Source: Podarcis melisellensis (Eukaryota). Taken from it: DNA of 64,000 nt. Within the stretch, counting starts at the first letter, position 1, and each line of letters begins with the position of its first letter. The stretch lies in NCBI GenBank assembly GCA_964234715.1, contig OZ174281.1; one strand, 5' to 3'. This document shows positions 5,643 through 63,844 of this stretch, one piece after another. Both the position numbers and the translations under genes were made by a program. The notes beneath the pieces were generated by a model. That model searched no databases, was not told the DNA's origin, and saw only the letters and a program-made list of their open reading frames with translations.

Positions 5643-5907
5643 CTGGCTGGTTCTCTCAAAAACAGGCTGCTTCCTTTTCTCAGTTTCCTATGCTTAAGCT
5701 CTCACAGTGATGCAGGAAACAACATGAGGTATCATTGAGGAAGAATAAACTGCCCTTGTTTTGTGCAAAGCAAAAGAGATTTTTCCTTCTCTGCAAGAGT
5801 TCCCTGTCTCTGTGCTCTTCAGCTGGCCTGCTCTGAATAGCAGTGATGGGAGTTACTGCAGTCTAGGAAGCATCAATGGATCTCTATCCTCTCTCTGGCT
5901 CTCACAC

Positions 5908-5948
5908 TGGCCAACACTGACACTTGGAGGACCACTCAAGGAACTGCA
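5908..5948 (-). promoter_or_regulatory. V1 promoter CSE / CTCF site (CAGT variant)
   Basis: TGCAG-N13-CCTCCAAGTGTCAGTGTTGGCCA, ~270 bp upstream of the ATG. The same 41-bp layout occurs before all 11 exons. Confidence 0.8.
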
Positions 5949-6278
5949 AGGAAAACCATGTTGTGCAATGTACAGTACTTTCCCTTTAGCAAATTTCAAG
6001 TTATTTGCTTTCAGTTTGTACACATTAAAACAACAGCTTCTCTGATTGCTGCGCATAACAGCTCACAAGACTCACAACCCAGTCTGGAGATATACAGCCT
6101 ATTGAAAACATGTTTTGCCTTGATGTCTATCCCACTGAAATTGAACCCCCTTGAATGGAAGCTACATACCCAAGGGATCACCAGCAGAGCATTGCCTCAC
6201 TTTAACATGGTTATAGTCTTTTGTCCGTCAGTCTATCACACAACATCAGGGCACACAATTCCTTTCATTAAAATGTAG

Positions 6279-6490
6279 CAACATAAGAAGAGCCTTGCTG
6301 GATCAGAACCCAAGGCCTTTCTTGTTAAGCAGCTTGTCTCCCACTGTGGCATCTCCCACTGGAGGCATCCTGCTCCTAGTACCTGACGGGATATAGTCAG
6401 CACGACTTGCGGCCACCATGAAGTTGTCTATAAGGCATCCAAGTTAGTGGCCATCACAGCTTTTTGTGGGAGCAATTCCCATAAGTTATT
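6279..6490 (-). mobile_element. CR1-like LINE 3' fragment (paralogs ~18918-19135 and ~30475-30690)
   Basis: aacataagaagagcc(c/t)tgctggatcag motif, typical of squamate CR1 3' UTRs. Same position in three duplicated units. Confidence 0.6.
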
Positions 6491-7770
6491 TATTTACTGA
6501 AATGTGTAAAGTATGTGTGATTGTTCTGTAAAAAATAATAATAATGGCTGGATACAAGTTTGAATAGTTTTATATTATACACTCTAAGAAAGCATACCGA
6601 TTTATAAAGTTTCTAACAGTGTGTGCACGTCTGTATTATCTTGAACCTTATTGCACAAATTAAGTATGAAAATGTTCTATTTTCCCACCACAATGTTATC
6701 AGTCTCCCCACTCTGACTCTTACCATATTCATTAGTTTAACGATAGATAAAATATCCCATACCCTAATAATGTAAATAATGTATTTACATTAAATAATGT
6801 AAAGCTGGTGTTCTTAACCACACACTCCACTCAACTTATACCAAATAGTTGTTCTTGCTATAGTTAATAAGTCTTGGACTAATCCTCTGCTAGTATTAAA
6901 CCCTTAATACAACTGAATAAAACAATCAGAATAACCGTTGATAAAGTGTATCCTGTTATTATTTCAGCTTCCCTTATTATATCCACCTGGAACCTTTCAT
7001 TTCAGGACATGCCCCACAAAAATGTTGCTTCCTAGCATTGGTTGCCTTGCACTTCCCACTTAAATTACTTGCTGTCCTGTAGATCTGGTTGAAATGTGGC
7101 ACTGGGAGGACCATATCGCTTCTCCCTTGTCTTTGATCTAAACTAAATATTGTTAAGCATTGCATTTTTTTCCAAATAAAGAAGTTGTTCCACCCACTTG
7201 ACCATCTTAGTTGCGCTTTTCTGAGCATTCTGCATTTCATACAAGATCTTTATATGTAAATCTTCCAGAGAAGTCCAAAACAGTCCAAAAGATCTACTAT
7301 GAACAAATAGGAAGCATTCATGTTTTACACATTTTTCAGTTAACTCAAATCACAACAGGATGAATAAACTATGTGAGTGAGTGAAGTAAAAATCCACATA
7401 TTTAACCTCTGGGAGGAACTAAAAAATAACTACTGTATATAATGATAGTGATATTTTAATAATCTACAGGAAGAAAATTACTAGAAGGTAGAACAGGATA
7501 TAAATTCCATAATTCATGAAGACTCACCTGAACCTCATTTTCAGACTCAGCATTGAATTTGCCTCTGTCACTGCAATTTGTAGACTACTTGTAAAAAAAA
7601 GTTTTCTACAGTCTGAACAGCTGGTGCTAATAATATAACTTGATTTTTTTTTAGTTCTCTCATTTAGTAAATCAGGCAGTTAAGAGGAAAACAACTAAAA
7701 ATACTAGTTTTGCTCATACAAGGAGCAAGGTTGTGGTGCCTACATCACAGTTTCTGAAAGCAAAGCTTAC

Positions 7771-10200
7771 CTGCTCACCAACCTCCTCTTTGGCACTGGC
7801 ATCCCCACAGTTGCCATCCACAAGAACCACCTGAGAGCTATCATTGCATAGCAAGTTTTCTGACACCTGGATATGGGGTTTCGGGAAAGAGATCTGCTCT
7901 TTCCTCATCTCTGACGATAGGCAGAGTTGGTAGGAATAAGGTAAAGTTCCTTCTTCATAGTTTGGTGGAAATATGACCTGCGCCTTAGGAAAAGTATTAG
8001 GTTCAAAGCATTGGAATAATTTGGGATTTCCTGATTGTCGAAGTTTCATGACAATGACCAGTATCACCGTCAGGAGGAACAAAAATGAGATCAATGCCAA
8101 AGCCAGCACCAAGTAAAACTGGAGGTCAGAATGATGCTCTGTGTCACTGGATTGCCTAGTCATTTCTGGAAGTGCCTCTTGGAAGTTCTCAGCAACCACA
8201 AGGTTGAGGACCACAGTAGCTGAGAGTGGAGCCTTCCCATTGTCCTTCACCAGGATGACCAGCTTCTGTTTCACAGCATCTTTCTCCAGAAGGGCTCGTG
8301 ACGTCCTGATCTCTCCCGTGTGGGTCCCAATGATGAAGAGGGCCGGCTCTGTGGCCTGCAGCACTTGGTAGGAGAGCCAGGCATTGTGCCCAGAGTCAGC
8401 GTCCACAGCCACCACTTTGGTCACTAGGTAGCCTGGCTCTGCTGAATGAGGAACCATCTCAAACAAGGCAGAGCCCTCGGCGCCCGTGAAACGATACAGA
8501 ACGCGAGGGCTGTTATCGTTCTGATCCAAAATGTACACCCACACGGTGGTGTTGTTGCTGAGAGAGGGAGAGCCGCCATCTTGGGCCTTCACTTGGATCT
8601 GAAACTCCCTGAATTGCTCATAGTCAAAGGAGCGCTGTGCATAGATAGTTCCCGTCTCAGAGTTGATGGAGACGTAAGAGGAGAGAGGCAGCTCCTCCAT
8701 GTTGCTGTTGAGGATGGAGTAAGTGATACGTGAGTTGCGGTCCAGATCCGGGTCTGTGGCTTTGATGAAGAAAATGGAGGCACCTGAGGGATTGTTTTCA
8801 GGCACAAAGACACTGTAGGTTGATTTTTCAAAGGCAGGGGGGTTGTCATTGATGTCTGAAATCTGCAGGGAGATGGTTTTGTTGGAGGAGAGAGGGGGTC
8901 TACCTTTGTCGGTGGCCGAGATTGTGATGTTGTATCCTGAGGCTTTTTCTCTGTCCAAAGGACTGTCTGTGAGGATTTTATAGTAGTTATTAGATGTTGA
9001 CACTATTTTAAATGGTACATTACTTTGTAAGTGGCAGGTGATCTTTCCATTTTCTCCAGAATCCCTATCCTTTACATTGATGAGAGCTATTACTGTTCCG
9101 GAAACAGAGTCTTCAGGAACTGGACTAGATAAGGAGGTCAGAATGATCTCTGGAGCATTGTCATTCTCATCTAGAATCTTTATATTGACATTAGAGTGAG
9201 CCACTAATCCTCCTCCATCTCTTGCTTCAATTGTCATACTGTACATCTCTGTTTCCTCAAAGTCAAGAGCTTCCTTAATTGTAATGGTTCCACTTTGTGG
9301 AACTAGGTCAAATTTTTGGTAGGTTCTTTTGGGAATATTACTAAATGTATAATGAATTTGGGAATTCAGACCTTCATCTCTATCAGAGGCTTTTACTTGG
9401 AGTATGGGGGACCCTACAGGGGAATTTTCCCTCAGGCTAACTGTATAAACCTCTTGAGTGAAGACTGGTGGGTTGTCATTGGCATCTGTGACGTTAATCC
9501 ATATCTGGGCAGTCCCAGTTTTTCTGGGCTCACCCCCATCCAGGGCCGTAAGGATCAACTGAAGCGAGTGCTCACTTTCCCGATCCAAAGCTTTCTGCAG
9601 CACCAATTCTGCATATTTATGGCCATCTTCTCCCTGTCGAATCTCTAGAATGAAATAGTGATTTGGACTTAGCTGGTAATTCTGGAGAGAATTAGTCCCA
9701 ATATCAGGATCTTCAGCTTTCCCAATATGAAATCTTGTACCTGGTAATGTGGATTCAACAATTTCAAGCCTCATGATTTCATTTAAAAACTGTGGCATAT
9801 TATCATTAATGTCCTGAATTGCTACAATAATATGGAAAACATTTAAAGGATTTTCAACCACAGCTTCAAAATTAATCAGACAGTGCACACTGCCCCCACA
9901 TATTTCCTCACGATCTATCCTTTCATTTACATACAGGTTTCCATTTTGTGCATTGATAGTGAAATATGACTTTTTACCTTCAGAAATGATATGCAGGTTT
10001 CTGCTCTTCAGTTCTCTGGCATTCACTCCTAGATCCTTGGCAAGATTTCCCACCAAAGACCCCTTTGCCATCTCCTCAGGGATGGAATAGTGAACCTCTT
10101 CCAAAACTGCTCCACAGAACAAAGATGAAAATATCAGAAGTGTTATATACCTTCCTGGTGTTTGAAAGCTCTCTCCATGAAGGATTCCTCTCATCTTCAT
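7771..10200 (-). CDS. PCDHGB: Protocadherin gamma-B-type variable exon V2 (family B, MKMRGIL...), 810 codons
   Basis: Six EC repeats, [15 protein letters not shown]. First ATG at 10200 (ORF-track start 10224 is GTG). Donor CAG|GTAAGC at 7771/7770. Confidence 0.92.
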
Positions 10201-10440
10201 TTTCCTCTTCTCTTTGATGAGCACAGGATTTCAGATTTCCACCAAGACAGGAGATTTTTTTGCCCAGTAAAAAAAGAACTGGATCCTTTGGATTAATTTG
10301 TATATGCTGCAGTGTTTTCTGTTTTCCAGCTGAAACGTTTGTTGCAGCGTCTGCTGGTATTCCCGATGTGCAGTTTGGGACAAAGAGATCTCTCTGCAGA
10401 AAGCATCAGTGGAACTTCAGCTGCCCTTGGGTTGCCGCCT

Positions 10441-10481
10441 TGTCCAACAGTGACACTGTGAGTCTGAAGCAGAGAACTGCA
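10441..10481 (-). promoter_or_regulatory. V2 promoter CSE / CTCF site (CACT variant)
   Basis: TGCAG-N13-ACTCACAGTGTCACTGTTGGACA. Confidence 0.8.
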
Positions 10482-11253
10482 ATCTTTTCCCAGTGATTTT
10501 TCTCCCCAATACATGTCACAGAAGGTCTCTGTTGGTGTTTATATGTGATGACTCAAGGCAGGCTTTTAAACAGAATATGTGAACCTTCTTTACTAGGTTT
10601 AATTTTCACTCCAATCTTGATATTTTGTAGGTTAATTTTTTACTCTATGTTGATAGAGATATTTACAATTATTTCCAAGCTTATTAATGTGCAGTGTTGC
10701 TGACAAAAATGGAATTACAGGCTGCACAATTAAACATTATCATTTATAGTATGGGGCTATTAAAAAAATTGAGGAAAATATATTATTGCCTATAGTTAGG
10801 CCTTAGGCCATGAACCTTAGACACAAGAATGTCTGCTTTTAGAGGTATGTATCTTTCTGTGTTTGAGTGCATATCCTAAGGAGGCATCTTGTATTACATT
10901 GCTTATCACTGAAATTAGTCCCACATCTCATGCTTAGTTTTGTCATCTCGCCCCGTATTAGTGCTCAAATTATTGGTCTATTTGTGTGGACATCCCCTTC
11001 AATAGGTTTATTTAGCAGCTCTCAACTTTGCCATTGTTCCCCCCACATCCATGTGCTTCAGTGATTCAGTCACGGTAGATAGATTTCCAATTTCTAGTGT
11101 TAATTTAATTTACTATGTGTGTTTCTGACCTTGCACATCTACTTCACAGTCTCACAGGTATGGCTCATCACCCTCCTCTTTACACAGAACAATAACATTA
11201 TAGGTTTATTGTAAGCCAATAGTATGTAAGGGATCCTGAGTATGCAGCTTGAA

Positions 11254-13445: not shown

Positions 13446-14824
13446 CCAACCCCCCCTTGAACAAATCTTGAAAAAAAGAGATTTATAATTAGCCTAGCTA
13501 TAGGGAGATTTAAGTAAATCATAAGTCCCCCCCATGCCATTTTTATTGTGACTAATGATGAAGTTTTATTGTGACTAATGATGAAGTACAAATGCTTATT
13601 TTGTTTTTGGTTCTTTGTTAATGTTCTTGATATTGTTTTGTGGACTATGAGAGCTGTAATGCTTTGTGAATTTTATAATATGACTTTTCTTGTGGCTGTG
13701 CTGTTTAGCCTATTTTTAAACTTGTTTTGTTAAAAGTGTATTTAAAAGGTGGTTGTTTTACTTTACTGATGATTTGCTTATTATTTTCTATTATTTTTAT
13801 TGTGCTTGTGATGTTCTACTATGTTATTATTTATGGTACATAAGCCGTTTTGTGACTCATGTGAGTGTCCCATAACTTCCTGCTGAAATTCTGCAACTTT
13901 TTATAACACCAATGTTCTGGTTTATTCTTTGTCCCGCTTTCATTATACAGTAGTGCCCCTACAAATGACAATAGTTTAACTAGCAAGTAGTGATATTTTT
14001 CATGTAAGTTTATGTAAATCTTATTACCTAGTTTAGATTTTGTTACCTTGCTCTGTGCTGAAGACTAATGCAATGGCAGCTATTCTCTTCAAAAATGCAA
14101 TAACACTGGGGAGGCTAACAACTAATAAAGAAGAATGATGTGTGGACAATCCACGATACATTGACTATTAATACACTATTATTGTGTCAAATGTTGAAGA
14201 ATGCACCAGCAAAACAAAGAACAAAAAATTGCAACATCCCCTGAAAGGAGTATGTACTTATAAGCTAAAGTATGCAAATCACTGAAGATATTTTCTGCCA
14301 ACAAAAAGAAGTGTATTTCCTTGATTATATAGTAAAAAGAAAATGACACACTCCAAACCATGTGCCATAAAAAGAGCACAAAAACCTCACTTCTTATCAT
14401 TTAATATTAATAAATTTATTTAAGCACTAAAGCTGGAATTGTAAGCCATCTTCCCTGGAAGTAAGCCTTCTTGAAATCAAACAAAACAGAAAATGGAATA
14501 CCCCAACTGACTATGAAATAGCTAATTGCGCCAGGTGGTTTAGCCTCAGCTATGTAGAATAGATAGGAAAGATGATAACTCATGAGGGCTTTTATATTGA
14601 AAGCTGCCATGTGAACTTTGGATGAAAGGCAGTATAGAAAGCTAATAAATAATTAAAATGAACATACAAAATAAAGCCCCACCTATTGATTTCTATATGA
14701 AAAACTAACTAAAGACTGAAAAAGGCAGGTACACCTGCAGTATAAAAGGTTGTATTGAAATGTCACTTAACAGTAAAGAACTACAGAGTGAACCAGGCAT
14801 GCAACTGCAGAGAACAAATCTTAC

Positions 14825-17245
14825 CTCTTCACCATTAGCCATCTCAGAATGAAAATTGTTTCCACTGTTGCCTGTAAAAGGCTCATCAGGTTTCTCACTG
14901 CCAAGAATATTGTCTACCATCTGAACACTGGGTGTCAGGAAGGCAAACTCATTCTTCCTGGTCTCAGAAGAAAGACACAGCTGGTAGGAATAGGGCAAAG
15001 TCCCATCTTCAAAGTTGGGTGGGAAGATGGCACCATTCTTGGAATGGGGAACAGGACCAAAGCACTGTAGGAACCTGGGATGCCCTGACTGACGGAGCTT
15101 CATTGTAACGGCCAGAATCACGGTCAAGAGGAACAAGAAGGAGATCACAGCTAAGGCCAGCACTAAGTAGAACTGCAGGTCAGACTGATACTCCGAGCTG
15201 CTGGGTTGGCTCTTCATTTCCGGAAGGGCCTCCTGGAAGTTCTCAGCAAACACCAGGTTCAGAGTCATGGTGGCCGAGAGAGACGGCTGCCCGTTATCCT
15301 TCACCATAATGAACAGTCTCTGTTTCACAGCGTCTCTCTCCACAAAGGGCCTGGCGGTCCTGATCTCTCCAGTATGAGAACCAACCGTGAAGAGTGCCGG
15401 CTCAGTGGCCTGAGTCAGGTGGTAGGAGAGCCAGGCGTTGTGTCCAGAATCTGCATCCACGGCCACCACCTTGGTGACAAGATAATCTGCCTCGGCCGAA
15501 CGAGGCACCATCTCAAACAAGGCTGAGCCCTTGGCTTCTTGTGAGGGGGACAGGATACGAGGGCTGTTATCATTCCTGTCAAGAACAAACACCCTGACGC
15601 TCACATTGCTGCTGAGAGGGGGAGAACCCCCATCTTGGGCCTTCACTTGCAGCTGGAACTCTCTGAATTGTTCATAGTCAAAGGATCTCTGGGCATAGAT
15701 GGTGCCAGTCTCTGAATTAATGGAGATATAGGAGGAGATGGGAAGCTCCTCGATGTTGCTGTTGAGCATGGAGTATGTGATCCGTGAGTTCTGGTCCACG
15801 TCGGGATCAGAAGCTTTGATGGTGAAAATGGAGGCACCTGAAGGATTGTTTTCTGGCACGTTGATGTTGTAGGATGATTTCTGAAATGTAGGGGCATTAT
15901 CATTGATATCTGAGATCTGGAGAGAGATTGTTTTGTGTGTGAAAAGAGGCGGAGTTCCTTTATCAATTGCTGTGATTGTAATATTATATGCAGGAGTTCT
16001 TTCTCTGTCCAGGAGACTGTCTGTCTGGAGCTTGAAGTAATTGTTAGATGAGGGAAGAACTTTGAAGGGTAAATCATCGTTTAAGTAGCAAGTAACCTTC
16101 CCATTATCTCCACTATCTCTGTCATTCACATTGATCAGTGCAATGATTGTTCCTGGCAGAGAATCTTCAGGAACAGGACTGAACATGGAGGCTAAGGTCA
16201 CATCCGGGGCATTATCATTCTCATCATGAACCCTTAGCTCAATGTTAGAATGTGTCATCAATCCACCTCCATCTTTTGCAGCAACTGTCATAGTATATTC
16301 ATCGTTGTCCTCAAAATCCAATTGCTCCAGTAGTGTGATTGAGCCACTGATGGGATCCAGCTTGAATTTCCGTTCGGCACTTGCTGGTATGTTACTAAAA
16401 TGATACCTGATTTGGGCATTTGTACCTTCATCCTCATCAGAGGCTGCAACCTGGAGAACAAGTGACCCAACAGGAATATTTTCAGATAAACTGACCTTGT
16501 TCACCACTTGAGTGAAAACAGGTGGGTTGTCATTGGCATCAGTGACATTAATCCATATATGAACAGTCCCTGTTTTCCTAGGCTCACCCCCATCCATAGC
16601 GGTAAGAACCAAGTGAAGGGTCTGTTCACTTTCTCGATCAAGAGGGTTCTGTAGCACCAGTTCTGCATATTTATTTCCATCTTTTCTCTCTCTAACTTCC
16701 AAAGAGAAATACTGATTGGAGCTCAGCTGGTAATCCTGGAGAGAGTTCACCCCAATGTCAGGATCTTCCGCTTTCCCAAGGAGAAATTGTGTGCCTAGCC
16801 GAGTGGATTCAAGGATCTCTAAATTGATATTGCTATTCAGGAATTGGGGTGCATTATCATTAACATCCTGTATTTCCACTAGCACATGGAAAATATTCAA
16901 AGGGTTTTCCACCACAACTTCAAAATTAAGAAAGCAATTTGGATTTTTGCCACATATCCCCTCCCTATCAATTCTGTCATTTACATAGAGGTTTCCATTC
17001 TCTGCATTGATACTGAAATGCTGCATTTTTGCCACAGACACAGTGTGCAGATTGCGATGTTTTAGCTCTTTGGTGCTCAGTCCCAGGTCCTTGGCAAGGT
17101 TCCCCACAACGGAACCCTTTGCCATCTCCTCAGGGGTTGAATAATGGATCTGCTCTGATGCAGCCCAACAGGTAAAAGACAATAGAGAGAGAAGCAGTAC
17201 TTGCCTTGTGAGTGCCCTGCCATTCCCTGTGTGCCTTCTCTCCAT
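14825..17245 (-). CDS. PCDHGB: Protocadherin gamma-B-type variable exon V3 (family A), 807 codons
   Basis: Same architecture as V1. Donor GAG|GTAAGA at 14825/14824. Confidence 0.93.
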
Positions 17246-17515
17246 CTGGCTGGTTCTCTCAAAAACAGGCTGCTTCCTTTTCTCAGTTTCCTATGCTCAA
17301 GCTCTCACAGTGATGAAGGAAACAACATGAGGTATCACTGAGGAAGAATAAACTGCCCTTATTCTTATATTTGTGCAAAGCAAAAGAGATTTTTCCTTCT
17401 CTGCAAGAGTTCCGTCACTGTGCTCTTCAGTTGGCCTGCTCTGAATAGCAGTGATGGGAGTTACTGCAGTCTAGGAAGCATCAATGGATCTCTATCCTCT
17501 CTCTGGCTCTCATAC

Positions 17516-17556
17516 TGGCCAACACTGACACTTAGAGGACCACTCAAGGAACTGCA
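17516..17556 (-). promoter_or_regulatory. V3 promoter CSE / CTCF site (CAGT variant)
   Basis: TGCAG-N13-CCTCTAAGTGTCAGTGTTGGCCA. Confidence 0.8.
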
Positions 17557-18290
17557 TTTTGTTCTATGAAAATAGACAGAGGTGAATAAATGCAGATGTT
17601 TCTACAGCACATACTGTACCTTCCTTTCTGCTCACTGAGTGGAGCATTTGAGAAAACTTTTCCTTGGTGTTCTTTCTTAGTGTACAGCTACCCTCATTTA
17701 TGTTCGTGGCTTTTCAGTACTGTGAAAATTGGGGTTGTATCTAATACTGCAATTACATTAAGGTTATGCACATCTTCATTTTTTATTGGAAATATGCAAA
17801 CATTATTATTAATATAAAAATATCCAGTTATAGAGTAAAACTTTATCTTAAAATTAATGTATTACGATAATAGTTATGCTATAGTAGCACAAGAGCTGTA
17901 GGTCTAATGTATTTTTGTTGCTGTTGCTTAAATAGAATATAAACACCCTGCTGAAATTATTCTCTTTTTTATCTTTTCTATGTTGTTGGATGTCTATCAA
18001 CATTTATGGAACATAATACAAGTTCTTCTCAGTGTTGGGTAGGAATTCAGTTACTTACTATTCCAAGAGTTCTCTGTCTGTTGCGTATAAGATAAGATGC
18101 AACACGTGTAGCTTCTGTCTAGACAGCACTAGGTGATAAAGGTGTGTTCGCTGGTATTGGTTCTACATCAGACTCTGCCCCCCTGCTGGTGCCACACAAA
18201 TGTCCTTGCTTAGCAGTTGCTCCCCTGTGATCAAAGCAGGAACCCAGCACAAGTGCAGGACCAATGGCTGTAGTTGCTCTACCATGAGTA

Positions 18291-19247: not shown

Positions 19248-19804
19248 TAAAATGTGATGAAGCCACAGCAGTGTCATATACCATCAAAAAACAAACTTAT
19301 ACAAGTGTTCCTTGAGATTCACACTAATTGTTTGCTGCCATATCCATTTTCAATGATCTGTTGTTGCAATGAGTTGTCAACAAGGAATTCCATAGTTTAA
19401 CTATGCATTTAAGTTGATCATAACAGGGCAAATAAACTGTGCTTTTTGTGAGTGAAAAAGTACACATCCTTATTTTTAATTGATGAGGGATGTATAAATA
19501 ACTATATATTTATGGTGACATACTAATACCCCACAGGAAGATTGGACACTCAGTGTATGCATGCTTACATTTCCTTTAATTCCAGAGATGAAGACTCACT
19601 CTGCCATTATTGTATGATTCAGAATTTATGCTACGTCTACCATTGCAACTTAAAAGCTATGTGTAGGGAAAGTTCTTCACAATCAGAACAACGGCTGCTA
19701 ACACTGTAATTTCATTTTCCTGACCCCTTTATATAGTAAAATGAAATAAAAATATTAGTTTTATTCTTATAAGGAGCAATGCTGTTTCTGAAAGCAAAGC
19801 TTAC

Positions 19805-22234: not shown

Positions 22235-22479
22235 TTTCCTCTTCTCTTTGATGAGCACAGGATTCCAGATTTCCACAAAGACAGGAGATTTTCCCCAGTA
22301 AAAAAAGAACTGGATCCTTTGACTTAATTTGTATATGCTGCAGTGTTTTCTTTTTCCTTTTTCAGCTGAAATGTTTTTTTTTCTAGCGTCTGCTGGTATT
22401 CCCAATGTGCAGTTTGGGACAAAGAGATCTCTCTGCAGAAAGCATCAGTGGAACTTCAGCTGCCCTTGGGTTGCCGCCT

Positions 22480-22520
22480 TGTCCAACAGTGACACTGTGA
22501 GTCTGAAGCAGAGAACTGCA
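22480..22520 (-). promoter_or_regulatory. V4 promoter CSE / CTCF site (CACT variant)
   Basis: Identical to the V2 site. Confidence 0.8.
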
Positions 22521-45432: not shown

Positions 45433-45473
45433 TGGTAAACAGCGACACCCAGAGTCCTAAAACAATAACTTCA
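45433..45473 (-). promoter_or_regulatory. V8 (gamma-A) promoter CSE / CTCF site, intact CGCT box
   Basis: TGAAG-N13-ACTCTGGGTGTCGCTGTTTACCA; resembles the mammalian Pcdhg CSE. Confidence 0.85.
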
Positions 45474-47483: not shown

Positions 47484-48582
47484 ACTACATTTCTAGGAGC
47501 TTCATGTGACATCAAGCATGTCTGTAGCAATGTGATTCTGTCAAGTGTTTAGGGGATTTTTTTTTTATCTTATACTGTGTTGTAATGCTAAGCATGACAT
47601 GAATTATCCAATTCTGATTTTGTCACATAAAACAGCATCAAGTATTCTCAAATTCGCTGCTTCTCTGAAATCTTTATCATCTCTTTCTTTCTAAACTGGT
47701 TTGAAAACTGATTCTTTTTTCCTTTTTTTAAAAAAAAATCATAAAAGTGTAGAATTATAGCAAATGATTCAAAATGAGTGACCAAACTAATTCAAAAATA
47801 TGGAGAAAACTACCACCACCCTATTTGTTTGGGTAGGAAGTTATTTGGTTAATGTGTGGAATCTTCAAATATTAGATTCCTCTATCCAAAATCTTTAAGA
47901 GCACAGCCCAAGATCACAGAAGGGTGCTAATTGTTTCAATTCTAAGTTGAGGATTGGGAATTTGAGCAGGTAGTGACAAGCTATAAGGACAAATTAAAAC
48001 TGAAGAGATTGCTAATTATCTAACTATTAGGTGTATAAATAATTCCTCTAGCATTCACTGCAATTAAAGTTGAAAGAATATTGCAGTATCAAATAGCAGA
48101 CATTGTAAAGCACCCCAATTTTCATTGCACACAGGGGTGCTATAAAATGATATCATAAGATGTGAACTAAGTGGGTGTGATCCAAAATTATTTATTGCTT
48201 CCTCTTCCTTCCTCCTTCTCCACTCCCGTCACTTCCAGACTGTGACATATATGCACATTTATCCGCCTTATTAAGTATCCATATAGATGGCAATGTGTAG
48301 ATCTGTAAATAAGTAACTGCAGAGCATGTCTAGAACTACAGTAGGATTAGTCAGAATTAATATAGATAAAATGATTGCTTCATTAAAGTTGAAGTAACTA
48401 GAAAAACAAGGACTATTTAGCATCTGTTATAAAAGAAATTATATCTCTTTTCCTCAGACTGTACATCATTATGAATCTATTGGAAGATACATCCACTATC
48501 TACAATATAGTTCTTCATATATAGACACAGTTTAAAAGTAGTGCAGGAGATAATGTGAATAATATCTAGAACGAAAACTCAC

Positions 48583-51003: not shown

Positions 51004-51280
51004 CTGATTTGGTGAGACAATTGCTTTATTCTTTTCTTGCATATTTTCATTAGATGGAGATTCTCAAGTTCCCATCAGGTCCCACAAATCCACAATAAGG
51101 AAGTATAAAAGCAGTCACTGTCTCTTTCTATATGTTGCAGTGTGTTTTATTTCCTCAGCAAAAGTGTTTTAATGTCCCTGTGTTCTACTATCTCCCAGTT
51201 CTGCAGTCTATGGCTGAACAACGGCACTGCAGGAAGCATCGCTTAGCAGATTCCATGCAGCACCATGAGATGCAGCACAT

Positions 51281-51321
51281 TAGCCAACAGCGACACTCTG
51301 AGTCTGAGATGGAGAACTTCA
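51281..51321 (-). promoter_or_regulatory. V9 promoter CSE / CTCF site, intact CGCT box
   Basis: TGAAG-N13-ACTCAGAGTGTCGCTGTTGGCTA. Confidence 0.85.
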
Positions 51322-52403
51322 TGTGCTGCTTTTCCCCCCCCCCCCCTTCCTCTAGTGCTTAGATGGAGAATACAAGAGCAATCTATTTTCAAATGCAGTA
51401 TGAGAAGGTTTTCTTGCTTTGTAACTATTTTCTGGTGTTTTGCTTTTACAGTAGCATGAAATGGAAATATATTTCAAGTGCTTGAGAGATGCAACAACCT
51501 CCCCTATCCCTCAAATTTTCCATCTTCCCTCTGTACTTCCACAGATAACTGAGATTGTTAGCACTCAACAACATTTTGTAGCCAATTAATGCAACTTCTA
51601 TGTCCAGCTCTCCTCTGTAAAACAATACATTTAATAAAATTCAGCGATATTACTATTTTTAATGAAAAGGTGAGCAACTAACAGAGCAATCTTATGGAGG
51701 TTGGACAGGCAGCATGGATGGCAGAGATAATTGTAGCAGAGGAACCAAATGATGAATAGGGCACAAGATAGGAGGTGGCTTTTTTTACTTTCCCCATTTT
51801 CTTTCTTGTAGAAAAAAATAAATTGGTTCCACAGGGAAGGAAAATAACTCCAGGGCTGGTGTAGTTTCCCCCCTATTCCATCCTTGAGTAGGTCTGGGAA
51901 ACAAGGGAATCTAAAGCCTCCCTAGAGCACCCCTTCTTCCACCCATAGAGCACTGCCTGCAATACAGCCATGGCAACGGAGTGTTCTGTCACTGGTCAAG
52001 GAATGAACTCTCCAGTGGAGCTTCCTCTCTGCTGTTAGATAACCTCCTCTGCTCAAAGGCAAAGGTCTGCAGAATCCCAGGTCCCCTGGGACCACTTACA
52101 ACAGAGGACTAAAAAAGTCCTTGCTACTTACTCCAAACTCTTCTCTAAACGCTTGCACAAACACTTGTAAAAACGCACGGGTGGTTATTTTTCTAATTCA
52201 TTTTATGCATGCCACTTACAGGGTACAAAAAACAGTGAGAGGAATAAAACAGAGACCTTTAAAAATAGTTAACTTTGTCATCATTTGTCACTAAAATGCT
52301 GGCCTGGGTTTAAGGTGAATACATAATGGCATGAATGAGTGCTAAATAACAGTTTGGCCAAAGTTTGAACTGTTTGTCAATGTATCCTCAAATACTGTTG
52401 TGA

Positions 52404-53890: not shown

Positions 53891-55363
53891 AGTACCATGT
53901 ACCCTGATGGTGTATCAACAACAATTCTATGCAGATCACATGCTTCGTCAAAGCACTCTCATCTATGCATTGGTCTCCAGGTGGCATCACATGATAAAGG
54001 AAGCAGCAAGAGAGGAACTGCGATTTATTTCACCCTTCATTTGTCCTTTCTAGTCTAATGCACCAAGGGAGGGACGTATGAATGTCTTCTGAATGCATGA
54101 GCTCTAAAGGCATCTGATTCTGAAACATATCCAACTAACCACGAAACTTAAGAATGTTTGCAAATTGTTCGCAAATAGTATAACACAAGACATCACCAAC
54201 GAGTGCTGTAGGACATCTGCAAAAAGTCTCTAAGCATAAAAATATTGATAAGCAAAAGGTTTACAGCCTAAGGGAGTTTGGAGCATGCATCTGAGAAAGC
54301 ATGCATTGTAGCTTTCTTTGACTAGAAGGGAATATTAACATGTTGAATTGTATTGCAACCTGGACTGTTCCATTTTAACATCTATAGTTAGAACATTTGT
54401 TCAAAGGCCATTTTATGCGTCCATAGTTTTAACATCACTAACAGCATGATCCAAATGAATGTTTACCTGGAGCTTACCCGAGGTACTTACTCCTTGGAGA
54501 GTATGTACAGAATTGGAGCCTTTGGGTGCTTCCAGATGGAGGTTTAATATTACAAATGGTTCACTGAGATATCGCAAATGGGTCACTGACAACATTTTTA
54601 AAAAAATAATTGGATTGTCTGTGGCAACAGTTAAATGTGGCCTGGTGCTGGGACTGTTGGCTATACCCTCACCACTGTATAGCCAGCAAGGTTACCAACA
54701 GCCTTATTATTGGGATTCTCAACAGTCTACTGAGAAAAGCAGTTGGTAACCTTTACCAGAGCGAGGGAGGAACACAAAACAGCAAGCAGACTCAACAAAG
54801 TGGGAGAGAAGTAATATGAGGACTGTGAGTGACACAACATCAAAGTTCTGGAAAGCAGTGAGGATGGAGAGAGAGGAAGTAGAGGAGGGTTAATATGCAA
54901 ATAGGCTGAAAGGGGGAACCAACACTATTTAAGCTTGAGGGTTTTAGAAAGGAGAAGAGTTATCAACCTGAAAATCACTGATTACCTCTTTAAGGGGAAA
55001 AATGCAACACATGAGTTTTTCTCTTATTAAAAAGAACTTGCCAAACTACAGAATTTCATAACTACTTGAGACACATTGCACTTTACTAACAAAAAAGGTG
55101 AAGGCTAGTGAAAAGTTGAAAGCCACAAAGTAAGTGGTAAGTTATCATGATATAAAAGAGACATAACAGTGTTAGGTGTGCCTATTTTTCAGGAAAGTGT
55201 TCATAATTGCTGACAGATGAGACTTGAGTCACAGATATGTCAGACTGAAATCTTAGTATGTGACTGTAAAAAGGCCCACTTAAGTCAGAGGCGCCCATAT
55301 ATGCATAAATATGCACAATACAATAAAAATGTTTATGAGATGCGCAATGAAAATAATTTTTAC

Positions 55364-57784
55364 CTTCTCAATATTCTCCATCTCAGGATGTAAATTGTTT
55401 CCTTCATTGCCTGTAAAAGGAACACTAGTTTTCTCACTGCTAACAATATTGTCTACCATCTGAACACTGGGTGTCAGGAAGGCAAACTCATTCTTCCTGG
55501 TCTCAGAAGACAGACACAGCTGGTAGGAATAGGGCAAGGTCCCATCTTCAAAGTTGGGTGGGAAGATGGCACCATTCTTGGAATGGGGAACAGGACCAAA
55601 GCACTGTAGGAACCTGGGATGCCCTGATTGACGGAGCTTCATTGTAACGGCCAGAATCACAGTCAAGAGGAACAAGAAGGAGATCACAGCTAAGGCCAGC
55701 ACCAAGTAGAACTGCAGGTCAGACTGATACTCTGAGCTGCTGGGTTGGCTCTTCATTTCCGGAAGGGCCTCCTGAAAGTTCTCAGCAAACACCAGGTTCA
55801 GAGTCATGGTGGCTGAGAGAGACGGCTGCCCGTTATCCTTCACCATAATGACCAGTCTCTGTTTCACAGCGTCTCTCTCCACAAAGGCCCTGGCTGTCCT
55901 GATCTCTCCAGTATGAGAACCAACCGTGAAGAGTGCCGGCTCAGTGGCCTGAGTCAGGTGGTAGGAGAGCCAGGCGTTGTGTCCAGAATCTGCATCCACG
56001 GCCACCACCTTGGTGACAAGATAATCTGCCTCGGCCGAACGAGGCACCATCTCAAACAAGGCTGAGCCCTTGGCTTCTTGTGAGGGGGACAGGATACGAG
56101 GGCTGTTATCATTCCTGTCAAGAACAAACACCCTGACGCTCACATTGCTGCTGAGAGGGGGAGAACCCCCATCTTGGGCCTTCACTTGCACCCGAAACTC
56201 TCTGAATTGTTCATAGTCAAAGGATCTCTGGGCATAGATGGTGCCGGTCTCAGAATTAATGGAGATATAGGAGGAGATGGGAAGCTCCTCAATGTTGCTG
56301 TTGAGGATGGAGTATGTGATCCATGAGTTCTGGTCCATGTCGGGATCAGAGGCTTTGATGGTGAAAATGGAGGCACCTGAAGGATTGTTTTCTGGCACGT
56401 AGATAGCATACAAAGATTTCTCAAAGGAAGGGGCATTATCATTGATATCGGATATCTGTAGTAAGATGACTTTATGGGTGTTCAGCGGGGGAGTTCCATT
56501 GTCAGTGGCTGTGATTGTAATATTATATGCAGGAGTTTTTTCTCTGTCCAAAGGGCTGTCTGTCTGGAGTTTGAAGTAATTGTTAGACGAGGGAACAATC
56601 TTGAAGGGCTGATTGTTTTTCAAATAACAACTAACCTTTCCATTCTCACCAGTGTCTTTGTCTTTTACATTGATCAGAGCAATTAAGGTTCCAGACACAG
56701 AATCTTCTGGGACTGGACTAAATAAGGAAACCAGAGTTACCTCTGGGAAATTGTCATTCTCATCAATAATCTGTATTTCTACTTTACAATGTGTTACTAA
56801 TCCACCTCCATCTTTTGCCGCAACTGTCATAGTATATTCTCTGGTTTCCTCAAAGTCTAATGGGCTCATAAGAGTGATTGTGCCATTACTAGAATGCAAG
56901 TTGAATTTCCCCTGAGCACTTTTTTGGATGTTGCTGAAATGGTAACTGATTTTGGCATTTGTACCTTCATCTTTATCAGAGGCTAAAATCTGGAGCACAA
57001 GGGAGCCAACAGGAGCATTTTCCTTCAGATTGACCTTGTAAACCTCTTGGGTGAAGATAGGTGGGTTGTCATTGGCATCTGTAACATTAATCCATATCTG
57101 GGCAGTCCCAGTCTTCCTAGGTTCACCACCATCCAAGGCTGTGAGGATCAAGTGAATGGTCTGTTCACTTTCCCGATCTAGTGGTTTCTGAAGCACCAAG
57201 TCTGCAAATTTATTTCCATCCTGACTCTCTTTAACATCAAGGCTGAAATATGGATTGGGGCTGAGATGGTAATTCTGAAGAGAATTTGTCCCAATGTCAG
57301 GATCTTCAGCTTCTCCGAGGAGAAATCGTGTTCCTGGTACAGTGAACTCACTTGTCTCCAAGTTGATTTTTCCATTGAAAAACTGTGGTGCATTATCATT
57401 AATGTCCTGGATTGCTATAGTTATGTGGAAAATATTCAAGGGGCTTTCAATTACCATCTCAAAATTAATAAAGCAAAGGGGATTTTTGCCACATATTCCC
57501 TCCCGGTCTATCCTGTCATTTACATAGAGGTTTCCATTCTCTGCATTCATAGTGAAATATTTCATTTCATCCACTGAGACAGCATGCATGTTGCGTTTCC
57601 CTAGTTCTTTGGCATTCAGTCCCAAATCCTTGGCAATATTCCCCACAACTGAACCCTTAGCCATTTCCTCAGGAACTGAATAATGAATCTGCTCTGAAGC
57701 AGCCCAGCAGGAGGGCAAGAATATTAAGAGAAGCTGTACTTGCCTTGTGAGTGCCCTGCCATTCTTCTTGTGTCTTCTCTCCAT
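55364..57784 (-). CDS. PCDHGB: Protocadherin gamma-B-type variable exon V10 (MERRHK...; family-A C-terminal half), 807 codons
   Basis: Six EC repeats and TM. Donor AAG|GTAAAA (weak) at 55364/55363, at the position homologous to the other donors. Confidence 0.91.
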
Positions 57785-58028
57785 TTGGCTCTGTGAAAAA
57801 TCAGCTGTTTCCTTTTTTTAAGAACCAGATCAAATTTTCACCAGTATGCACTAAGTCTCCATAAAAAAGAATAAACTGTCTTTCTCGTTAATTTGTAAAA
57901 ATCATTTTTGTATTTTCTTTATGTCAGCAGCAATGCTTTCTCTCTGTTCCCTGATCTGCACAGCACTAAAGAAGTAAGCTCACTGTAGAAAGGATCAGTG
58001 GATTTCCATCACTGTATGGCTACTAGAT

Positions 58029-58069
58029 TGGCCAACAGCGGCACTGTGAGGTTCTGCAGGAGAACTGCA
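58029..58069 (-). promoter_or_regulatory. V10 promoter CSE / CTCF site, intact CGCT box
   Basis: TGCAG-N13-CCTCACAGTGCCGCTGTTGGCCA. Confidence 0.85.
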
Positions 58070-58706
58070 AGGGATGTATTCAACCTTTCAATTTAAGAGA
58101 CAATGCAACGTGCATGTAACGTAATTATAGTTTTATACAGTAGGGAAAACATGCAACTGGAAGTTTACACAGGAGCTATTTCTATTGAATTTTGACTTCA
58201 GCTGAATATTTGGGAATCTTTGTTTTGGTTTTGGAATCAATAACACTTCAAACCTTTCCATTTGCCTGGGTAAATGGCTTGCAATGTAACAAAGGATTCT
58301 TTTCTTGGAATCTTGGAAATAATATTATCAAAGTTACAATCCTGAGTGCCAGAATCTCAACAGTCTCAACATTGTCATCTCGGGTTATATATATATTTTT
58401 AATCTCCTGTTTCCACTTTAAAAAAAAATATCTTGGGGAGTTTACTATATTTCAATGATAATGTCGAAACAATAAAAACAATTTCCGCCCAACCACAGAT
58501 CAACCACAGATCTCTTGCAGAACTTTCCCACTCCTTCCTTAGGAAAAAGGCTTGATGAGCGAGGGAGAAGAATTCTCCAAAGGGACTCCAAAGATGTCTC
58601 ATCCCAGCCAATGAAGGGAATCCCTGTGCAGCTGGCAGCACTTGTGCTCTCCCACTCTTTCTGAAAATATTAAAGGCATGATTGGTCCCTGCTGGGCCTA
58701 TGTAGG

Positions 58707-60901: not shown

Positions 60902-60906
<5 letters not shown>

Positions 60907-61133
60907 TCATTAAAAGAACCAATTCCAACAGTTTATGAACCAATCAGACTTGAAAGAATACACAATCAAGTTGAACCAATTAGTTGGTTAAAGGTAGGTT
61001 GAAAAACAATAAATTAAAATATATTAGTTGTATAAAAAAAGATTACGGAATCAGCAACAAAGATTCATAAAAAATTTCCATTCTTTAAGCAGCAAGAATG
61101 TATAATGTAGATACTGCTCAGATTAAAACTCAC

Positions 61134-63548
61134 CATATCAGTTCTATCCATCTCAGAAATCAGGATATTGCCTCCATTGGCAGTCAAAGGTGCATCAGTG
61201 TTGCTTGAAATATTTTCTGCAGTTTGAAGATTGGGTGTTGGAAAGGTGAACTCCTGTACCCTGGACTCAGAAGATAAGCACAGCTGATAGGAATACGGCA
61301 ATGTTCCTTCTTCATAGTTTGGTGGGAAAATGACTGTGTTGTTTGAATGGGGAACAGGAGCAAAACACTGCAGGAATTTGGGGTTCCCTGATCGCCGAAT
61401 CTTCATGAGAATGGCCAGAATCACTGTCAGGAGGAATAAGAAGGAGATCAAAGCTAAGGCCAGCACCAAGAAGAACTGTAGATCCGATTGATACTCGGAG
61501 TCACTGGGCTGGTGGCTAATTTCTGGAAGTGCCTCCTGGAAGTTCTCAGCAAACACCAGGTTGAGACTCACGGTAGCGGATAGTGGTGGCTGCCCATTAT
61601 CCTTGACTAAGATGATGAGCTTCTGCTTCACAGCATCTCTTTCCAGAAAAGCCCGTGAGGTCCTGATCTCCCCAGTATGGGAACCAATTGAGAACAGCCC
61701 AGGTTCTGTTGCCTGGAGCAGATAGTAGGAGAGCCAAGCGTTGTGTCCAGAGTCAGCATCCACAGCCACCACCTTGGTCACCAGATAACCCTCCTCTGCT
61801 GAGCGAGGCACCATCTCAAACAAGGAGGAGCCCTCTACTCCTTGAGAAGGGTAAAGAATCTGAGGGCTTTGGTCATTCTGGTCCAGAATACACACTCTCA
61901 CGGTGGCATTGCTGCTGAGGCGGGGGGAGCCTCCATCTTCGGCCCTCACCTCCACTTGAAACTCCCTGACTTGCTCATAGTCAAAGGAGCGCTGAGCATA
62001 GATAGTGCCAGTCTCAGAATTAATGGAGAGGAAGGATGAGAGGGGCAGCCCCTCAGTGATGCTGCTGCGAATGGAGTAGGTGATTTGAGCATTCTGATCC
62101 ACATCTGGGTCAGAGGCTTTGACCCTGAAAATGGAGGAGCCTGAAGGATTGTTCTCTGGGACATAGGCAGTATAATAGGGTTTCTCAAAGGCAGGGCGGT
62201 TGTCATTGATGTCAGAGATCTGCAGTGTGATGGCTTTGTATGTGGAAAGAGGGGGGTTGCCTTTGTCTGTGGCTGTGACTGTGATATTGTACTCTGGAGT
62301 TCTTTCTCTGTCCAAGGGGGCATCTGTGAGAAGCTTATAATAATTATTGGAGGCTGATACCATCTTGAATGGCAAATTGTGTTGTAAATCACAAGCAATC
62401 TTCCCATTATCTCCAGAGTCTCTATCATTTACATTGATAAGGGCTACCAGGGTTCCTACTGCAGAGTCTTCAAGGATGGGGCTGGATAAAGAGGCAAGAA
62501 TCACTTCTGGGGCATTGTCATTCTCATCTAGAAGTATTATTTCAACTTTACAGTGAGCCACTAATCCACCTCCATCTCTTGCTTCCACTGCCATCACATA
62601 TCCTTCTGTTTCCTCAAAGTCCAGAACCTCCTTAACTATAATTGTTCCATCTTGTGAACCCAAGTGGAACTTTTGACGAGCACTTTCAGGGATGTTACTA
62701 AAACTATAGTTTATCTGGGCATTTGAACCATCATCTCTATCTGTGGCTTTCACCTGGACCACCAATGACCCTTTGGGGGCATTTTCTTTCAGCTTGACCG
62801 CGTATATTTTTTGAGTGAAGACTGGTGGGTTGTCATTTGCATCAATGACGGTGATCCATATTTTGGCTGTTCCAGATTTGGCAGGCTTCCCTCCATCCAG
62901 TGCCGTAAGGATTAATTGGAAACTGCTTTCACTTTCCCGATCCAACTGTTTATTCAACACTAATTCTGCATATTTCTTTCCGCCTTCTATTTCTCTCACT
63001 TCCAGAATAAAGTATGGATTTGTGCTAAGGTTGTAATCCTGGAGAGAATTCACCCCAAGATCAGGATCTTCAGCTTGTCCAAGGAGAAATGTGGTGCCTT
63101 GTAAAGACAATTCACTTGTCTCCAGCTTGATATCCCCATTTACAAAAAGTGGTGCATTATCATTAATGTCTTGGATCTCTACAGTTATATGAAAAATATT
63201 CATAGGACTTCCAACCACCACTTCAAAATTGATGGAGCAGATTGCAGTTTGACCACATAATTCCTCTCTATCAATCCTTTCCCTTACATACAGATTTCCA
63301 TTTTCTGCACTGAGAGTAAAGTATTGCTTTTTACCTAGGGAAAGGATATGCAGATTGTAATTTCCTATTTCTCCATTATTCAGGCTCAGGTCTTTAGCTA
63401 GGTTTCCCACAATGGAGCCCTTTTCCATTTCCTCAGGGATGGAATAATGAATGTGCTCTGAGCCAATCTGACCACACAGAGAGAATAATAAGAGGAGAGG
63501 TACTTGCCTTCTTAGGGATCTGCTGCTATCTTTCTGTCTGCCGGCCAT
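61134..63548 (-). CDS. PCDHGB: Protocadherin gamma-B-type variable exon V11 (family C, MAGRQK...), 805 codons
   Basis: Six EC repeats, [15 protein letters not shown]. Donor ATG|GTGAGT at 61134/61133. Confidence 0.92.
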
Positions 63549-63803
63549 CCCTCTTGCAGAGAAATGTGTTTTATCCTTTCTTTCTGTGATTAGTTAAATT
63601 GAGGCGTATTAAATCCCATTCACTCTGTAGAAGTGTTCAATAAAGAATCATGAACGAAGTCAGTAGCTGCTGCTGGATTTCTATACTTTGCAGTGGCTTT
63701 GTTCCTGTGTTCTGCTGTTTCCCAGCTCTGTAGTTTGTTCATGAGCAATCAAATTGCAAAAGCATCTGGTAGTGGATTCTCCACTCCTCCATGAGAACTA
63801 TAT

Positions 63804-63844
63804 TGGCCAACAGTGACACTCTGAGTCTTAGATGGGGAACTGCA
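63804..63844 (-). promoter_or_regulatory. V11 promoter CSE / CTCF site (CACT variant)
   Basis: TGCAG-N13-ACTCAGAGTGTCACTGTTGGCCA. Confidence 0.8.

What the first reader, a model, noticed from the sequence alone, without database searches (positions are those of the whole stretch)
5643..63844. CpG-free protocadherin promoters: 8 of 11 CSEs lost the methylatable CGCT box but kept the CTCF architecture
Seen: every exon has a 41-bp element, TG(C/A)A(G/A)-N13-core. The box reads CGCT only in V8, V9 and V10. It is CACT in V2, V4, V6, V7, V11 and CAGT in V1, V3, V5. I found no CpG at all between CSE and ATG in V1 (5643-5948), V5 (28793-29101) or V7 (39329-39633), and one in V3. The upstream module and its spacing are invariant, and all ORFs are intact. 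Established: mammalian clustered-Pcdh promoter choice involves CpG methylation of the promoter/CSE gating CTCF binding, and CTCF tolerates CAC/CAG at this part of the core. Inference: most of these promoters cannot be silenced by local CpG methylation, so isoform choice here may use another switch, or there may be two promoter classes (methylation-sensitive and insensitive).
Basis: partly seen in the sequence, partly recalled or inferred. Interest (0 to 1): 0.72.

Follow-up and report, generated by a model that had tools for sequence, protein, structure and literature searches.

The report
CpG-poor lizard protocadherin-gamma promoters
Eleven lizard protocadherin-gamma promoters keep the conserved control element known from mammals, but eight have lost its single methylatable CpG; this is part of a loss of CpG richness at this locus in all nine lizards and snakes sampled, and at least one CpG-less promoter is still transcribed.

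Summary
The window holds 11 protocadherin-gamma variable exons on the minus strand: 10 gamma-b-like and one divergent, gamma-a-like (V8). Each has one conserved sequence element (CSE) 246-280 nt upstream of its ATG. The box reads CGCT in V8, V9 and V10, CACT in V2, V4, V6, V7 and V11, and CAGT in V1, V3 and V5. V1, V5 and V7 have no CpG between box and ATG.

The emphasis needs correcting in four ways.
- The CpG-free promoters are not unusual here: 19% of random intergenic 273-nt windows have none.
- The eight losses reduce to about three CG>CA events plus one CACT>CAGT change, copied by tandem duplication.
- The loss is not specific to this species. Eight other squamates show it, and their gamma exons and promoters have CpG o/e 0.09-0.30, against 0.54-0.82 in turtle, pigeon and tree shrew.
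- CSEs without a CGCT box are already published for zebrafish and Xenopus alpha genes.

The CpG-less CSEs look functional. They are the best-conserved promoter block, every loss is CG>CA and never TG, and V7 is transcribed from its own promoter. CTCF binding and any alternative choice switch remain untested.

The parts
5904..5949 (-). CSE of V1, box CAGT (5919-5916)
10437..10482 (-). CSE of V2, box CACT; one CpG 15 nt 3' of the box
17512..17557 (-). CSE of V3, box CAGT
22476..22521 (-). CSE of V4, box CACT
29057..29102 (-). CSE of V5, box CAGT
34028..34073 (-). CSE of V6, box CACT
39589..39634 (-). CSE of V7, box CACT. No CpG from the box to the ATG. RNA of a close relative covers the exon and 5'UTR up to about 39474 and nothing in 39500-39899.
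45429..45474 (-). CSE of V8 (gamma-a-like exon), box CGCT, weakest match to the gamma-b matrix
51277..51322 (-). CSE of V9, box CGCT
58025..58070 (-). CSE of V10, box CGCT; the snake orthologue also has CGCT
63800..63845 (-). CSE of V11, box CACT; 46/46 identical to the Podarcis orthologue
3114..5642 (-). V1 variable exon ORF (gamma-b-like); V1, V3 and V5 are 90-95% identical
7714..10200 (-). V2 variable exon ORF; V2, V4 and V6 are 91-97% identical
14705..17245 (-). V3 variable exon ORF
19712..22234 (-). V4 variable exon ORF
26354..28792 (-). V5 variable exon ORF
31269..33791 (-). V6 variable exon ORF
36890..39328 (-). V7 variable exon ORF; 93% identical to a Zootoca vivipara protein named gamma-B5-like; transcribed
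42707..45160 (-). V8 variable exon ORF, about 53% identical to the other ten (gamma-a-like); transcribed in sense
48532..51042 (-). V9 variable exon ORF
55280..57784 (-). V10 variable exon ORF
61065..63548 (-). V11 variable exon ORF

Best explanation
These are working promoters of tandemly duplicated protocadherin-gamma variable exons in a lacertid lizard. Each carries the vertebrate CSE. In mammals the CSE is a forward-oriented CTCF site made of an upstream TGCAGTTC module, a fixed spacer and a core ending in the CGCT box.

In squamates the whole gamma-b unit (promoter and exon) has CpG content at genome-background level. This implies germline methylation followed by deamination, so CpGs decay. 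At the box, the G of CGCT sits at a position where G or A appears to be tolerated, while the C and the T are invariant. The CpG has therefore repeatedly decayed to CpA, giving CACT. Once it changed further to CAGT. These states were then copied by tandem duplication and kept by purifying selection.

Shown here: the sequence states, the phylogenetic pattern, the locus-wide CpG depletion across Squamata, the conservation of the CSE, and transcription of V7 and V8. Inferred: CTCF still binds the CACT and CAGT elements, and the depletion comes from germline methylation. One consequence follows directly. In 8 of 11 promoters CTCF binding cannot be blocked by methylation of the box. Whether isoform choice then relies on the few remaining CpGs or on another layer is open.
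For: The element is specific and placed as in mammals. It has the same architecture as the tree-shrew, turtle and pigeon CSEs.

Tree of the 5' 1200 nt of 30 exons: turtle and gamma-a sequences have CGCT. V2/V4/V6 plus their Zootoca orthologue (CACT) are sister to a Lacerta agilis CGCT copy. V11 plus its Podarcis orthologue (CACT) are sister to a Podarcis CGCT copy. V7 and V1/V3/V5 sit in a third clade. The CGCT label needs 5 changes over the sample, 3 of them forced by well-supported branches.

All 17 non-CGCT boxes are CA-type and none is TG. In contrast, ancestral coding CpGs decayed symmetrically in squamates (TG 56, CA 62).

The CSE is the best-conserved promoter block in CpG-less lineages: V7 versus Podarcis 89% against 43-53% in the flanks, and V11 versus Podarcis 100%.

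Locus CpG o/e for exon / promoter / rest is 0.15-0.29 / 0.09-0.30 / 0.11-0.26 in nine squamates. It is 0.65 / 0.72 / 0.42 in turtle and 0.82 / 0.69 / 0.43 in pigeon. In tree shrew the exons are 0.55-0.75, the promoters 0.54-0.80 and the rest 0.30.

RNA: contigs and stranded reads from a relative about 2.5% diverged cover V7 (38500-39474) and V8 (42882-44499) in sense. The non-repeat intergenic DNA has essentially no coverage (at most about 3, just 3' of V8), so V7 is not read-through from upstream promoters.
Against: No CTCF binding data exist for any squamate, and the register of the CSE against the CTCF core could not be checked in the structural paper. By eye the gamma CSE matches the CTCF consensus only partly.

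The CA-versus-TG asymmetry rests on only 3-5 independent events (p = 0.125-0.03).

RNA evidence covers one CpG-less promoter (V7), in a related animal, from unknown tissue, at low depth (about 0.1-1 in raw-read runs, against 1-5 for V8).

The outgroup comparison rests on one locus each for turtle, pigeon and tree shrew. I did not measure whether squamate promoters in general are CpG-poorer. Only unchecked notes of this scan mention real CpG islands elsewhere in this genome.
Confidence: 0.65

Rival explanations
1. Squamate protocadherin promoter choice has been uncoupled from DNA methylation. Either most promoters use a different switch, or there are two functional classes: methylation-sensitive CGCT and insensitive CACT/CAGT.
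For: 8 of 11 boxes lack the CpG, and 5 of 11 CSEs have no CpG within the 46-nt CSE span (-30 to +15 of the box). Both box types are conserved over long times: V10 and its snake orthologue both have CGCT, and CACT occurs in gecko, amphisbaenian, snake and lacertids. The box CpG is retained more often (9/26) than ancestral coding CpGs (16/208), which hints that CGCT is favoured where it is kept. In mammals the promoters sit in CpG islands and methylation is central (PMC10463633, PMC7811963).
Against: Nothing here measures methylation, CTCF or single-cell choice. CGCT promoters are as CpG-poor as the rest, so the classes would differ by a single CpG. CpGs remain in 5' exon sequence, where methylation correlated with expression in mouse (cited in PMC3333863). 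That same paper found CSE methylation did not affect complex formation, so even in mammals the box CpG may not be the switch.
Confidence: 0.2
2. Simple decay. The non-CGCT elements are dying CTCF sites, and their exons are on the way to becoming pseudogenes.
For: CG>CA is the expected deamination product in a methylated region. In the two raw-read runs V7 depth is lower than V8 depth.
Against: All ORFs are intact. The CpG-less CSEs are 87-100% conserved between species or paralogues while flanks fall to 37-53%. Identical CACT and CAGT states are shared by orthologues in Zootoca, Lacerta and Podarcis. V7 RNA has a sharp 5' limit downstream of its CSE and reaches depths similar to V8 in contig runs.
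Confidence: 0.05
3. A genome-wide property. Squamate promoters in general are CpG-poor, so the finding says nothing specific about protocadherins.
For: Cold-blooded vertebrates have promoter islands that sequence-based CpG-island criteria predict poorly (abstract of PMC3583005). All squamate loci sampled here have background o/e of 0.11-0.26.
Against: Turtle, also cold-blooded, has o/e 0.65-0.72 at the same units. Unchecked notes of this scan report real CpG-island promoters elsewhere in this genome. In outgroups exon and promoter o/e is about 1.5-2.5 times that of the flanks; in squamates the ratio is mostly about 1 (0.3-2.1).
Confidence: 0.1

Closest known systems
Mammalian clustered-protocadherin CSE promoter element (Wu et al. 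2001), a forward-oriented CTCF site; with the upstream SSE of Golan-Mashiach et al. (PMC3333863)
   Same: It sits about 200-300 nt upstream of each variable-exon ATG. It has the upstream TGCAGTTC module at fixed spacing and the core ...CTC.G.GTG(T/C)-box-GTTG.CCAA. It aligns directly to tree-shrew gamma CSEs.
   Different: The box is CACT or CAGT in 8 of 11 instead of the near-universal CGCT of mammals. There are 0-1 CpG in the element against 2-5 in tree shrew and turtle. There is no CpG-island context.
CSEs without a CGCT box in zebrafish alpha and Xenopus tropicalis alpha protocadherins (Noonan 2004, cited in PMC4978886; Etlioglu 2016, PMC4978886)
   Same: These are non-mammalian clustered-protocadherin promoters that keep a CSE but lack the CGCT box. 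[quoted passage not shown]
   Different: Those cases are alpha genes of fish and frog. Here it is the gamma-b group of an amniote, with CGCT and non-CGCT promoters side by side, and the change can be traced to CpG>CpA decay.
Green anole protocadherin cluster (Jiang et al. 2009, PMC2764143)
   Same: A squamate cluster whose gamma-b subgroup expanded by lineage-specific tandem duplication, as V1-V6 show here.
   Different: That paper does not analyse promoters, the CSE or CpG content: one search found no occurrence of CSE, CpG or CGCT in its text.

Membership tests
Clustered protocadherin gamma variable exon | Single large exon of about 2.4 kb encoding signal peptide, six cadherin repeats and a TM segment, arranged in tandem, with best matches named protocadherin gamma | tested here: met
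   There are 11 ORFs of 812-846 codons from their ATG, spaced 4.5-7 kb apart. The V7 search returned proteins that sources name gamma-B, led by Zootoca vivipara at 93%, with Cadherin_2, Cadherin and Cadherin_C_2 Pfam domains.
Protocadherin CSE promoter element | Conserved element at a fixed distance (about 200-300 nt) upstream of each variable-exon ATG | tested here: met
   The box lies 246-280 nt from the ATG in all 11. There are exactly 11 matrix hits in the window.
Protocadherin CSE promoter element | Highly conserved CGCT box | tested here: not met
   CGCT is present in 3 of 11 (V8, V9, V10). The rest are CACT in 5 and CAGT in 3. The flanking core is conserved.
Protocadherin CSE promoter element | Sequence homology to mammalian CSEs, including the upstream module at fixed spacing (SSE / CTCF upstream motif) | tested here: met
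   The elements align without gaps to tree-shrew, turtle and pigeon elements. TGCAGTTC lies 29-30 nt before the box.
Protocadherin CSE promoter element | Binds CTCF/cohesin | not testable with these tools
   No squamate ChIP data were available. This rests only on homology to experimentally bound mammalian CSEs (PMC3333863, PMC7811963).
Methylation-gated CTCF site (mammalian model of promoter choice) | CpG at the ZF3-contacted box, so that 5mC can block binding | tested here: not met
   This CpG is absent in 8 of 11. Five of the 11 CSEs hold no CpG at all in 46 nt.
CpG-island promoter | GC of at least 0.5 and CpG o/e of at least 0.6 over at least 200 nt at the promoter or 5' exon | tested here: not met
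   Promoter o/e is 0-0.30 and exon o/e is 0.19-0.31. Nearly all island-like 200-nt windows lie in intergenic repeats; the listed exceptions sit deep in the V2 and V6 exons (about 8381-8680, 32081), none at a promoter or 5' exon end.

The most novel reading that the evidence does not exclude
Across Squamata the protocadherin-gamma cluster has given up the CpG-island, methylation-gated CTCF mechanism that governs stochastic promoter choice in mammals. Its CSEs would then be constitutively competent for CTCF, and isoform choice would be made by another layer, such as heterochromatin or loop-extrusion competition. The loss of CpG islands may have gone together with the large gamma-b expansion seen in lizards.
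Probability: 0.2. Interest if true: 0.75.

Novelty: new variant of a known kind. Interest (0 to 1): 0.45.

Why it matters
The current model of how each neuron picks its protocadherin isoforms rests on mammals. There, the promoters sit in CpG islands, and methylation of the CGCT box is said to decide whether CTCF can bind and loop the promoter to the enhancer.

In a whole amniote order the same promoters keep the CSE but have lost the islands. About half of the gamma-b promoters sampled have also lost the box CpG, yet they stay conserved, and at least V7 is expressed. Squamates therefore offer a natural experiment. Adjacent paralogues differ only by CGCT, CACT or CAGT, which allows a direct test of how much the box CpG contributes to promoter choice.

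The finding is modest as it stands. It is sequence-level only, CGCT-less CSEs are already known in fish and frog, and local CpG depletion explains it.

Tried and rejected
- Chance absence of CpG was tested and found to be sufficient. Zero-CpG promoters occur at the background rate, so I dropped 'CpG-free' as a signal in itself.
- I rejected the count of eight independent losses after the identity matrix and the tree.
- I rejected silent decay after the conservation and RNA results.
- I tried by eye to fix the register of the CSE against the CTCF core consensus on both strands. Neither register is clean. The papers that would settle it (Guo 2012, Yin 2017) are not held. I rely on reviews stating that the CSE is a forward CTCF site whose CGCT box is read by ZF3 (PMC6881428, PMC7811963).
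- The tuatara locus, which would date the CpG loss, was not on record.
- The promoter of the Zootoca orthologue of V8 falls at an assembly gap. I left it unread.
- The squamate matrix found no pigeon CSE. A looser pattern found one with CGCT.
- Rfam found nothing in the transcribed CpG-rich repeats.
- Earlier scan notes matching all the words protocadherin, CSE, CGCT, promoter and CTCF: none.
- No human sequence was used. The mammalian comparison is Tupaia chinensis.
Full report
**What is in the window**

The window carries 11 long ORFs on the minus strand. From their first plausible ATG they run 812-846 codons and begin with a signal peptide followed by the cadherin motif YSIPEE. A database search with V7 returned thousands of proteins that sources name protocadherin gamma-B. 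The best were Zootoca vivipara (93%), Podarcis (86-90%) and Lacerta agilis (83%). The window therefore comes from a lacertid lizard and holds part of the gamma variable-exon array.

V1, V3 and V5 are 90-95% identical over exon plus promoter, and V2, V4 and V6 are 91-97% identical. This means a two-exon unit was duplicated in tandem. V8 is only about 53% identical to the rest and groups with a second divergent copy in L. agilis, so it is gamma-a-like. The 3' halves of V1, V3, V5, V7 and V10 are 98-99% identical, yet their promoters differ.

Reading the 450 nt upstream of each ATG in gene orientation shows one element per exon. It consists of TTGCAGTTC, about 20 variable or semi-conserved bases, CTCA.AGTG(T/C), a 4-nt box, and GTTGGCCA.
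- The upstream module starts 29-30 nt before the box in all 11, without indels.
- The box is CAGT in V1, V3 and V5, CACT in V2, V4, V6, V7 and V11, and CGCT in V8, V9 and V10.
- CpG counts between box and ATG are 0, 4, 1, 2, 0, 4, 0, 2, 2, 1, 2.
- A position matrix built only from other species' elements finds exactly these 11 sites in the 64 kb, on the expected strand. Shuffled sequence scores near zero.

**What is not unusual**

The whole window has CpG o/e of 0.24. Intergenic DNA is at 0.22, exons at 0.19-0.31 and promoters at 0-0.30. Of 1209 intergenic 273-nt windows, 19% hold no CpG. The promoters together hold 18 CpG against 24.1 expected (P = 0.12), or 11 against 15.3 when duplicates are collapsed (P = 0.16). 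'CpG-free' therefore describes the background here and is not a property of these promoters. The CGCT promoters are just as CpG-poor as the others.

**How many events**

I built a maximum-likelihood tree from the first 1200 coding nt, which lie outside the homogenised 3' tracts. It holds 30 exons from the window and from loci fetched from Zootoca, L. agilis, Podarcis raffonei, Rhineura, Tiliqua, Eublepharis, Candoia and the turtle Trachemys.
- Turtle gamma-b and both gamma-a copies have CGCT.
- V2/V4/V6 and their Zootoca orthologue (all CACT) are sister to an L. agilis copy with CGCT.
- V11 and its Podarcis orthologue (CACT) are sister to a Podarcis CGCT copy.
- V7 (with Zootoca and Podarcis copies, CACT) and V1/V3/V5 (with an L. 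agilis copy, CAGT) share a third clade. That clade also holds CACT copies from a gecko, an amphisbaenian and a snake, and CGCT copies from V10 plus its snake orthologue and from a skink.

The window's eight non-CGCT boxes thus need about three CG>CA events and one CACT>CAGT change. The whole sample needs five changes of the CGCT label, three of them forced by well-supported branches.

**The loss is Squamata-wide and locus-wide**

In the other squamates about half of the gamma-b CSEs lack the CpG. More telling is the CpG o/e of the units:

| Group | Exon | Promoter | Flanks |
|---|---|---|---|
| Nine squamates | 0.15-0.29 | 0.09-0.30 | 0.11-0.26 |
| Turtle | 0.65 | 0.72 | 0.42 |
| Pigeon | 0.82 | 0.69 | 0.43 |
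| Tree shrew | 0.55-0.75 | 0.54-0.80 | 0.30 |

Turtle, pigeon and tree-shrew CSEs all read CGCT, and the turtle and tree-shrew elements shown carry 2-5 CpG. The first 1200 nt of the exon hold 42-56 CpG in turtle, 27 in tree shrew and 7-19 in the lizard. At the eight CpG sites shared by tree shrew and turtle, squamates retain CG in 8% of cells and show TG (56) and CA (62) about equally. This is the signature of methylation-driven deamination on both strands.

Mammalian clustered protocadherins are noted for keeping prominent CpG islands at each variable exon (PMC10463633). The anole cluster paper does not treat promoters or CpG. Full-text searches found no paper on lizard protocadherin promoter methylation.

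**Are the CpG-less elements functional?** Three lines of evidence say yes.

1. Conservation. The 46-nt element is the best-conserved promoter block in CpG-less lineages. V7 versus its Podarcis relative is 89%, against 43-53% for the flanks. V11 versus Podarcis is 46/46. V1 versus L. agilis is 87%, against 37% upstream. This matches CGCT lineages, where V10 versus snake is 89% against 45-56%.
2. Direction of change. All 17 non-CGCT boxes are CA-type and none is TG, although coding CpGs decay both ways. With 3-5 independent events this is only suggestive (p = 0.125-0.03). It fits a site where the first C is required and the next base may be G or A. That is what the CTCF core consensus (...GGC-R-S) would predict if the box is the ZF3 contact, as reviews state (PMC7811963). 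The consensus and this register come from my own knowledge and from the reviews. They were not verified here.
3. Transcription. I placed it on 38500-44499, which covers the 5' part and promoter of V7, intergenic DNA and the 3' part of V8. The runs are from an animal about 2.5% diverged from the window.
   - Two small runs held as contigs cover V7 from 38500 to 39474 (depth 4-73) and V8 from 42882 to 44499 (16-74).
   - Two stranded raw-read RNA runs cover both exons at low depth, with the first mate on the plus strand only. This means sense transcription of minus-strand genes.
   - Nothing lies on 39500-39899, which holds the CSE at 39589-39634. Nothing lies on the non-repeat intergenic DNA either. 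The V7 signal is therefore not intronic read-through from upstream promoters. It ends at least 100 nt downstream of the box, as expected for a start site 3' of the CSE.
   - In that stretch the closest paralogue of V7 is only about 80% identical, so cross-mapping is excluded.

**What remains inference**

No data here show CTCF on any lizard CSE. By eye the gamma CSE matches the CTCF core only in part, and I could not obtain the structural or EMSA papers.

The premise that box methylation gates CTCF is itself disputed. One study found that CpG methylation of the SSE-CSE did not alter the complex. It also cites work in which CSE methylation was mosaic regardless of transcription, while methylation of the first exon correlated with expression (PMC3333863). 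The lizard exons still have 1-8 CpG in their first 500 nt, and V2, V4 and V6 have a CpG 15 nt after the box. A methylation-based switch is therefore not excluded.

**Comparison with what is known**

The element is a CSE by position, architecture and homology. It departs in the one feature that gave the CSE its name, the CGCT box. CSEs lacking that box are already described for zebrafish and Xenopus alpha genes, and weaker conservation is noted for Xenopus gamma (PMC4978886).

Within the reach of my searches, three things appear new:
- the gamma-b case in an amniote, with CGCT, CACT and CAGT promoters side by side;
- its origin by repeated CG>CA decay;
- the order-wide loss of CpG-island character at these units, against turtle, bird and mammal.

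**Verdict**

The finding is best read as tolerated CpG decay in functional CSEs of a CpG-eroded locus. It is a new variant of a known element and a useful natural experiment. It is not evidence for a new mechanism of promoter choice.

Noticed in passing
window 39979-40205 and 41014-41400 (similar CpG-rich windows at 23821-24260 and 35341-35640): These are CpG-rich, high-copy intergenic repeats. RNA runs cover them at depths of hundreds on both strands, and reads run off into many different flanks. They account for almost all of the 'CpG-island-like' 200-nt windows in the window. There is no Rfam match.
   Followed up: partly
window, about 35-55 nt 3' of each gamma-b box (e.g. 5865-5885 for V1); also L009 (turtle): A second semi-conserved promoter block, GGA.ATCCAYTGATGCTTYCTGCAG, appears in most gamma-b promoters of lizards and in turtle. 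It may be a start-site region or another factor's site.
   Followed up: partly
window, the base immediately 5' of each box; loci L001-L009: The base before the box covaries with the box. GTGC or GTGT (once GTGG) precedes CGCT, but GTGT always precedes CACT and CAGT. GTGC-CACT was never seen in 30 elements.
   Followed up: no
window 3611-4300, 15214-15900, 26761-27450, 37297-37990, 55753-56440: The 3' halves of exons V1, V3, V5, V7 and V10 are 96-100% identical, while their 5' halves are about 80% identical and their promoters differ. The homogenised (gene-conversion) tracts stop short of the promoters.
   Followed up: partly
L001 (Zootoca vivipara) about 4090-4590: The promoter of the Zootoca orthologue of V8 abuts an assembly gap (a run of N), so its CSE could not be read. 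It was left as it is.
   Followed up: no
window 42014-42388: Low-depth RNA contigs (depth 2-3) lie just 3' of the V8 exon. This is consistent with intronic pre-mRNA from V8 or from upstream exons.
   Followed up: no
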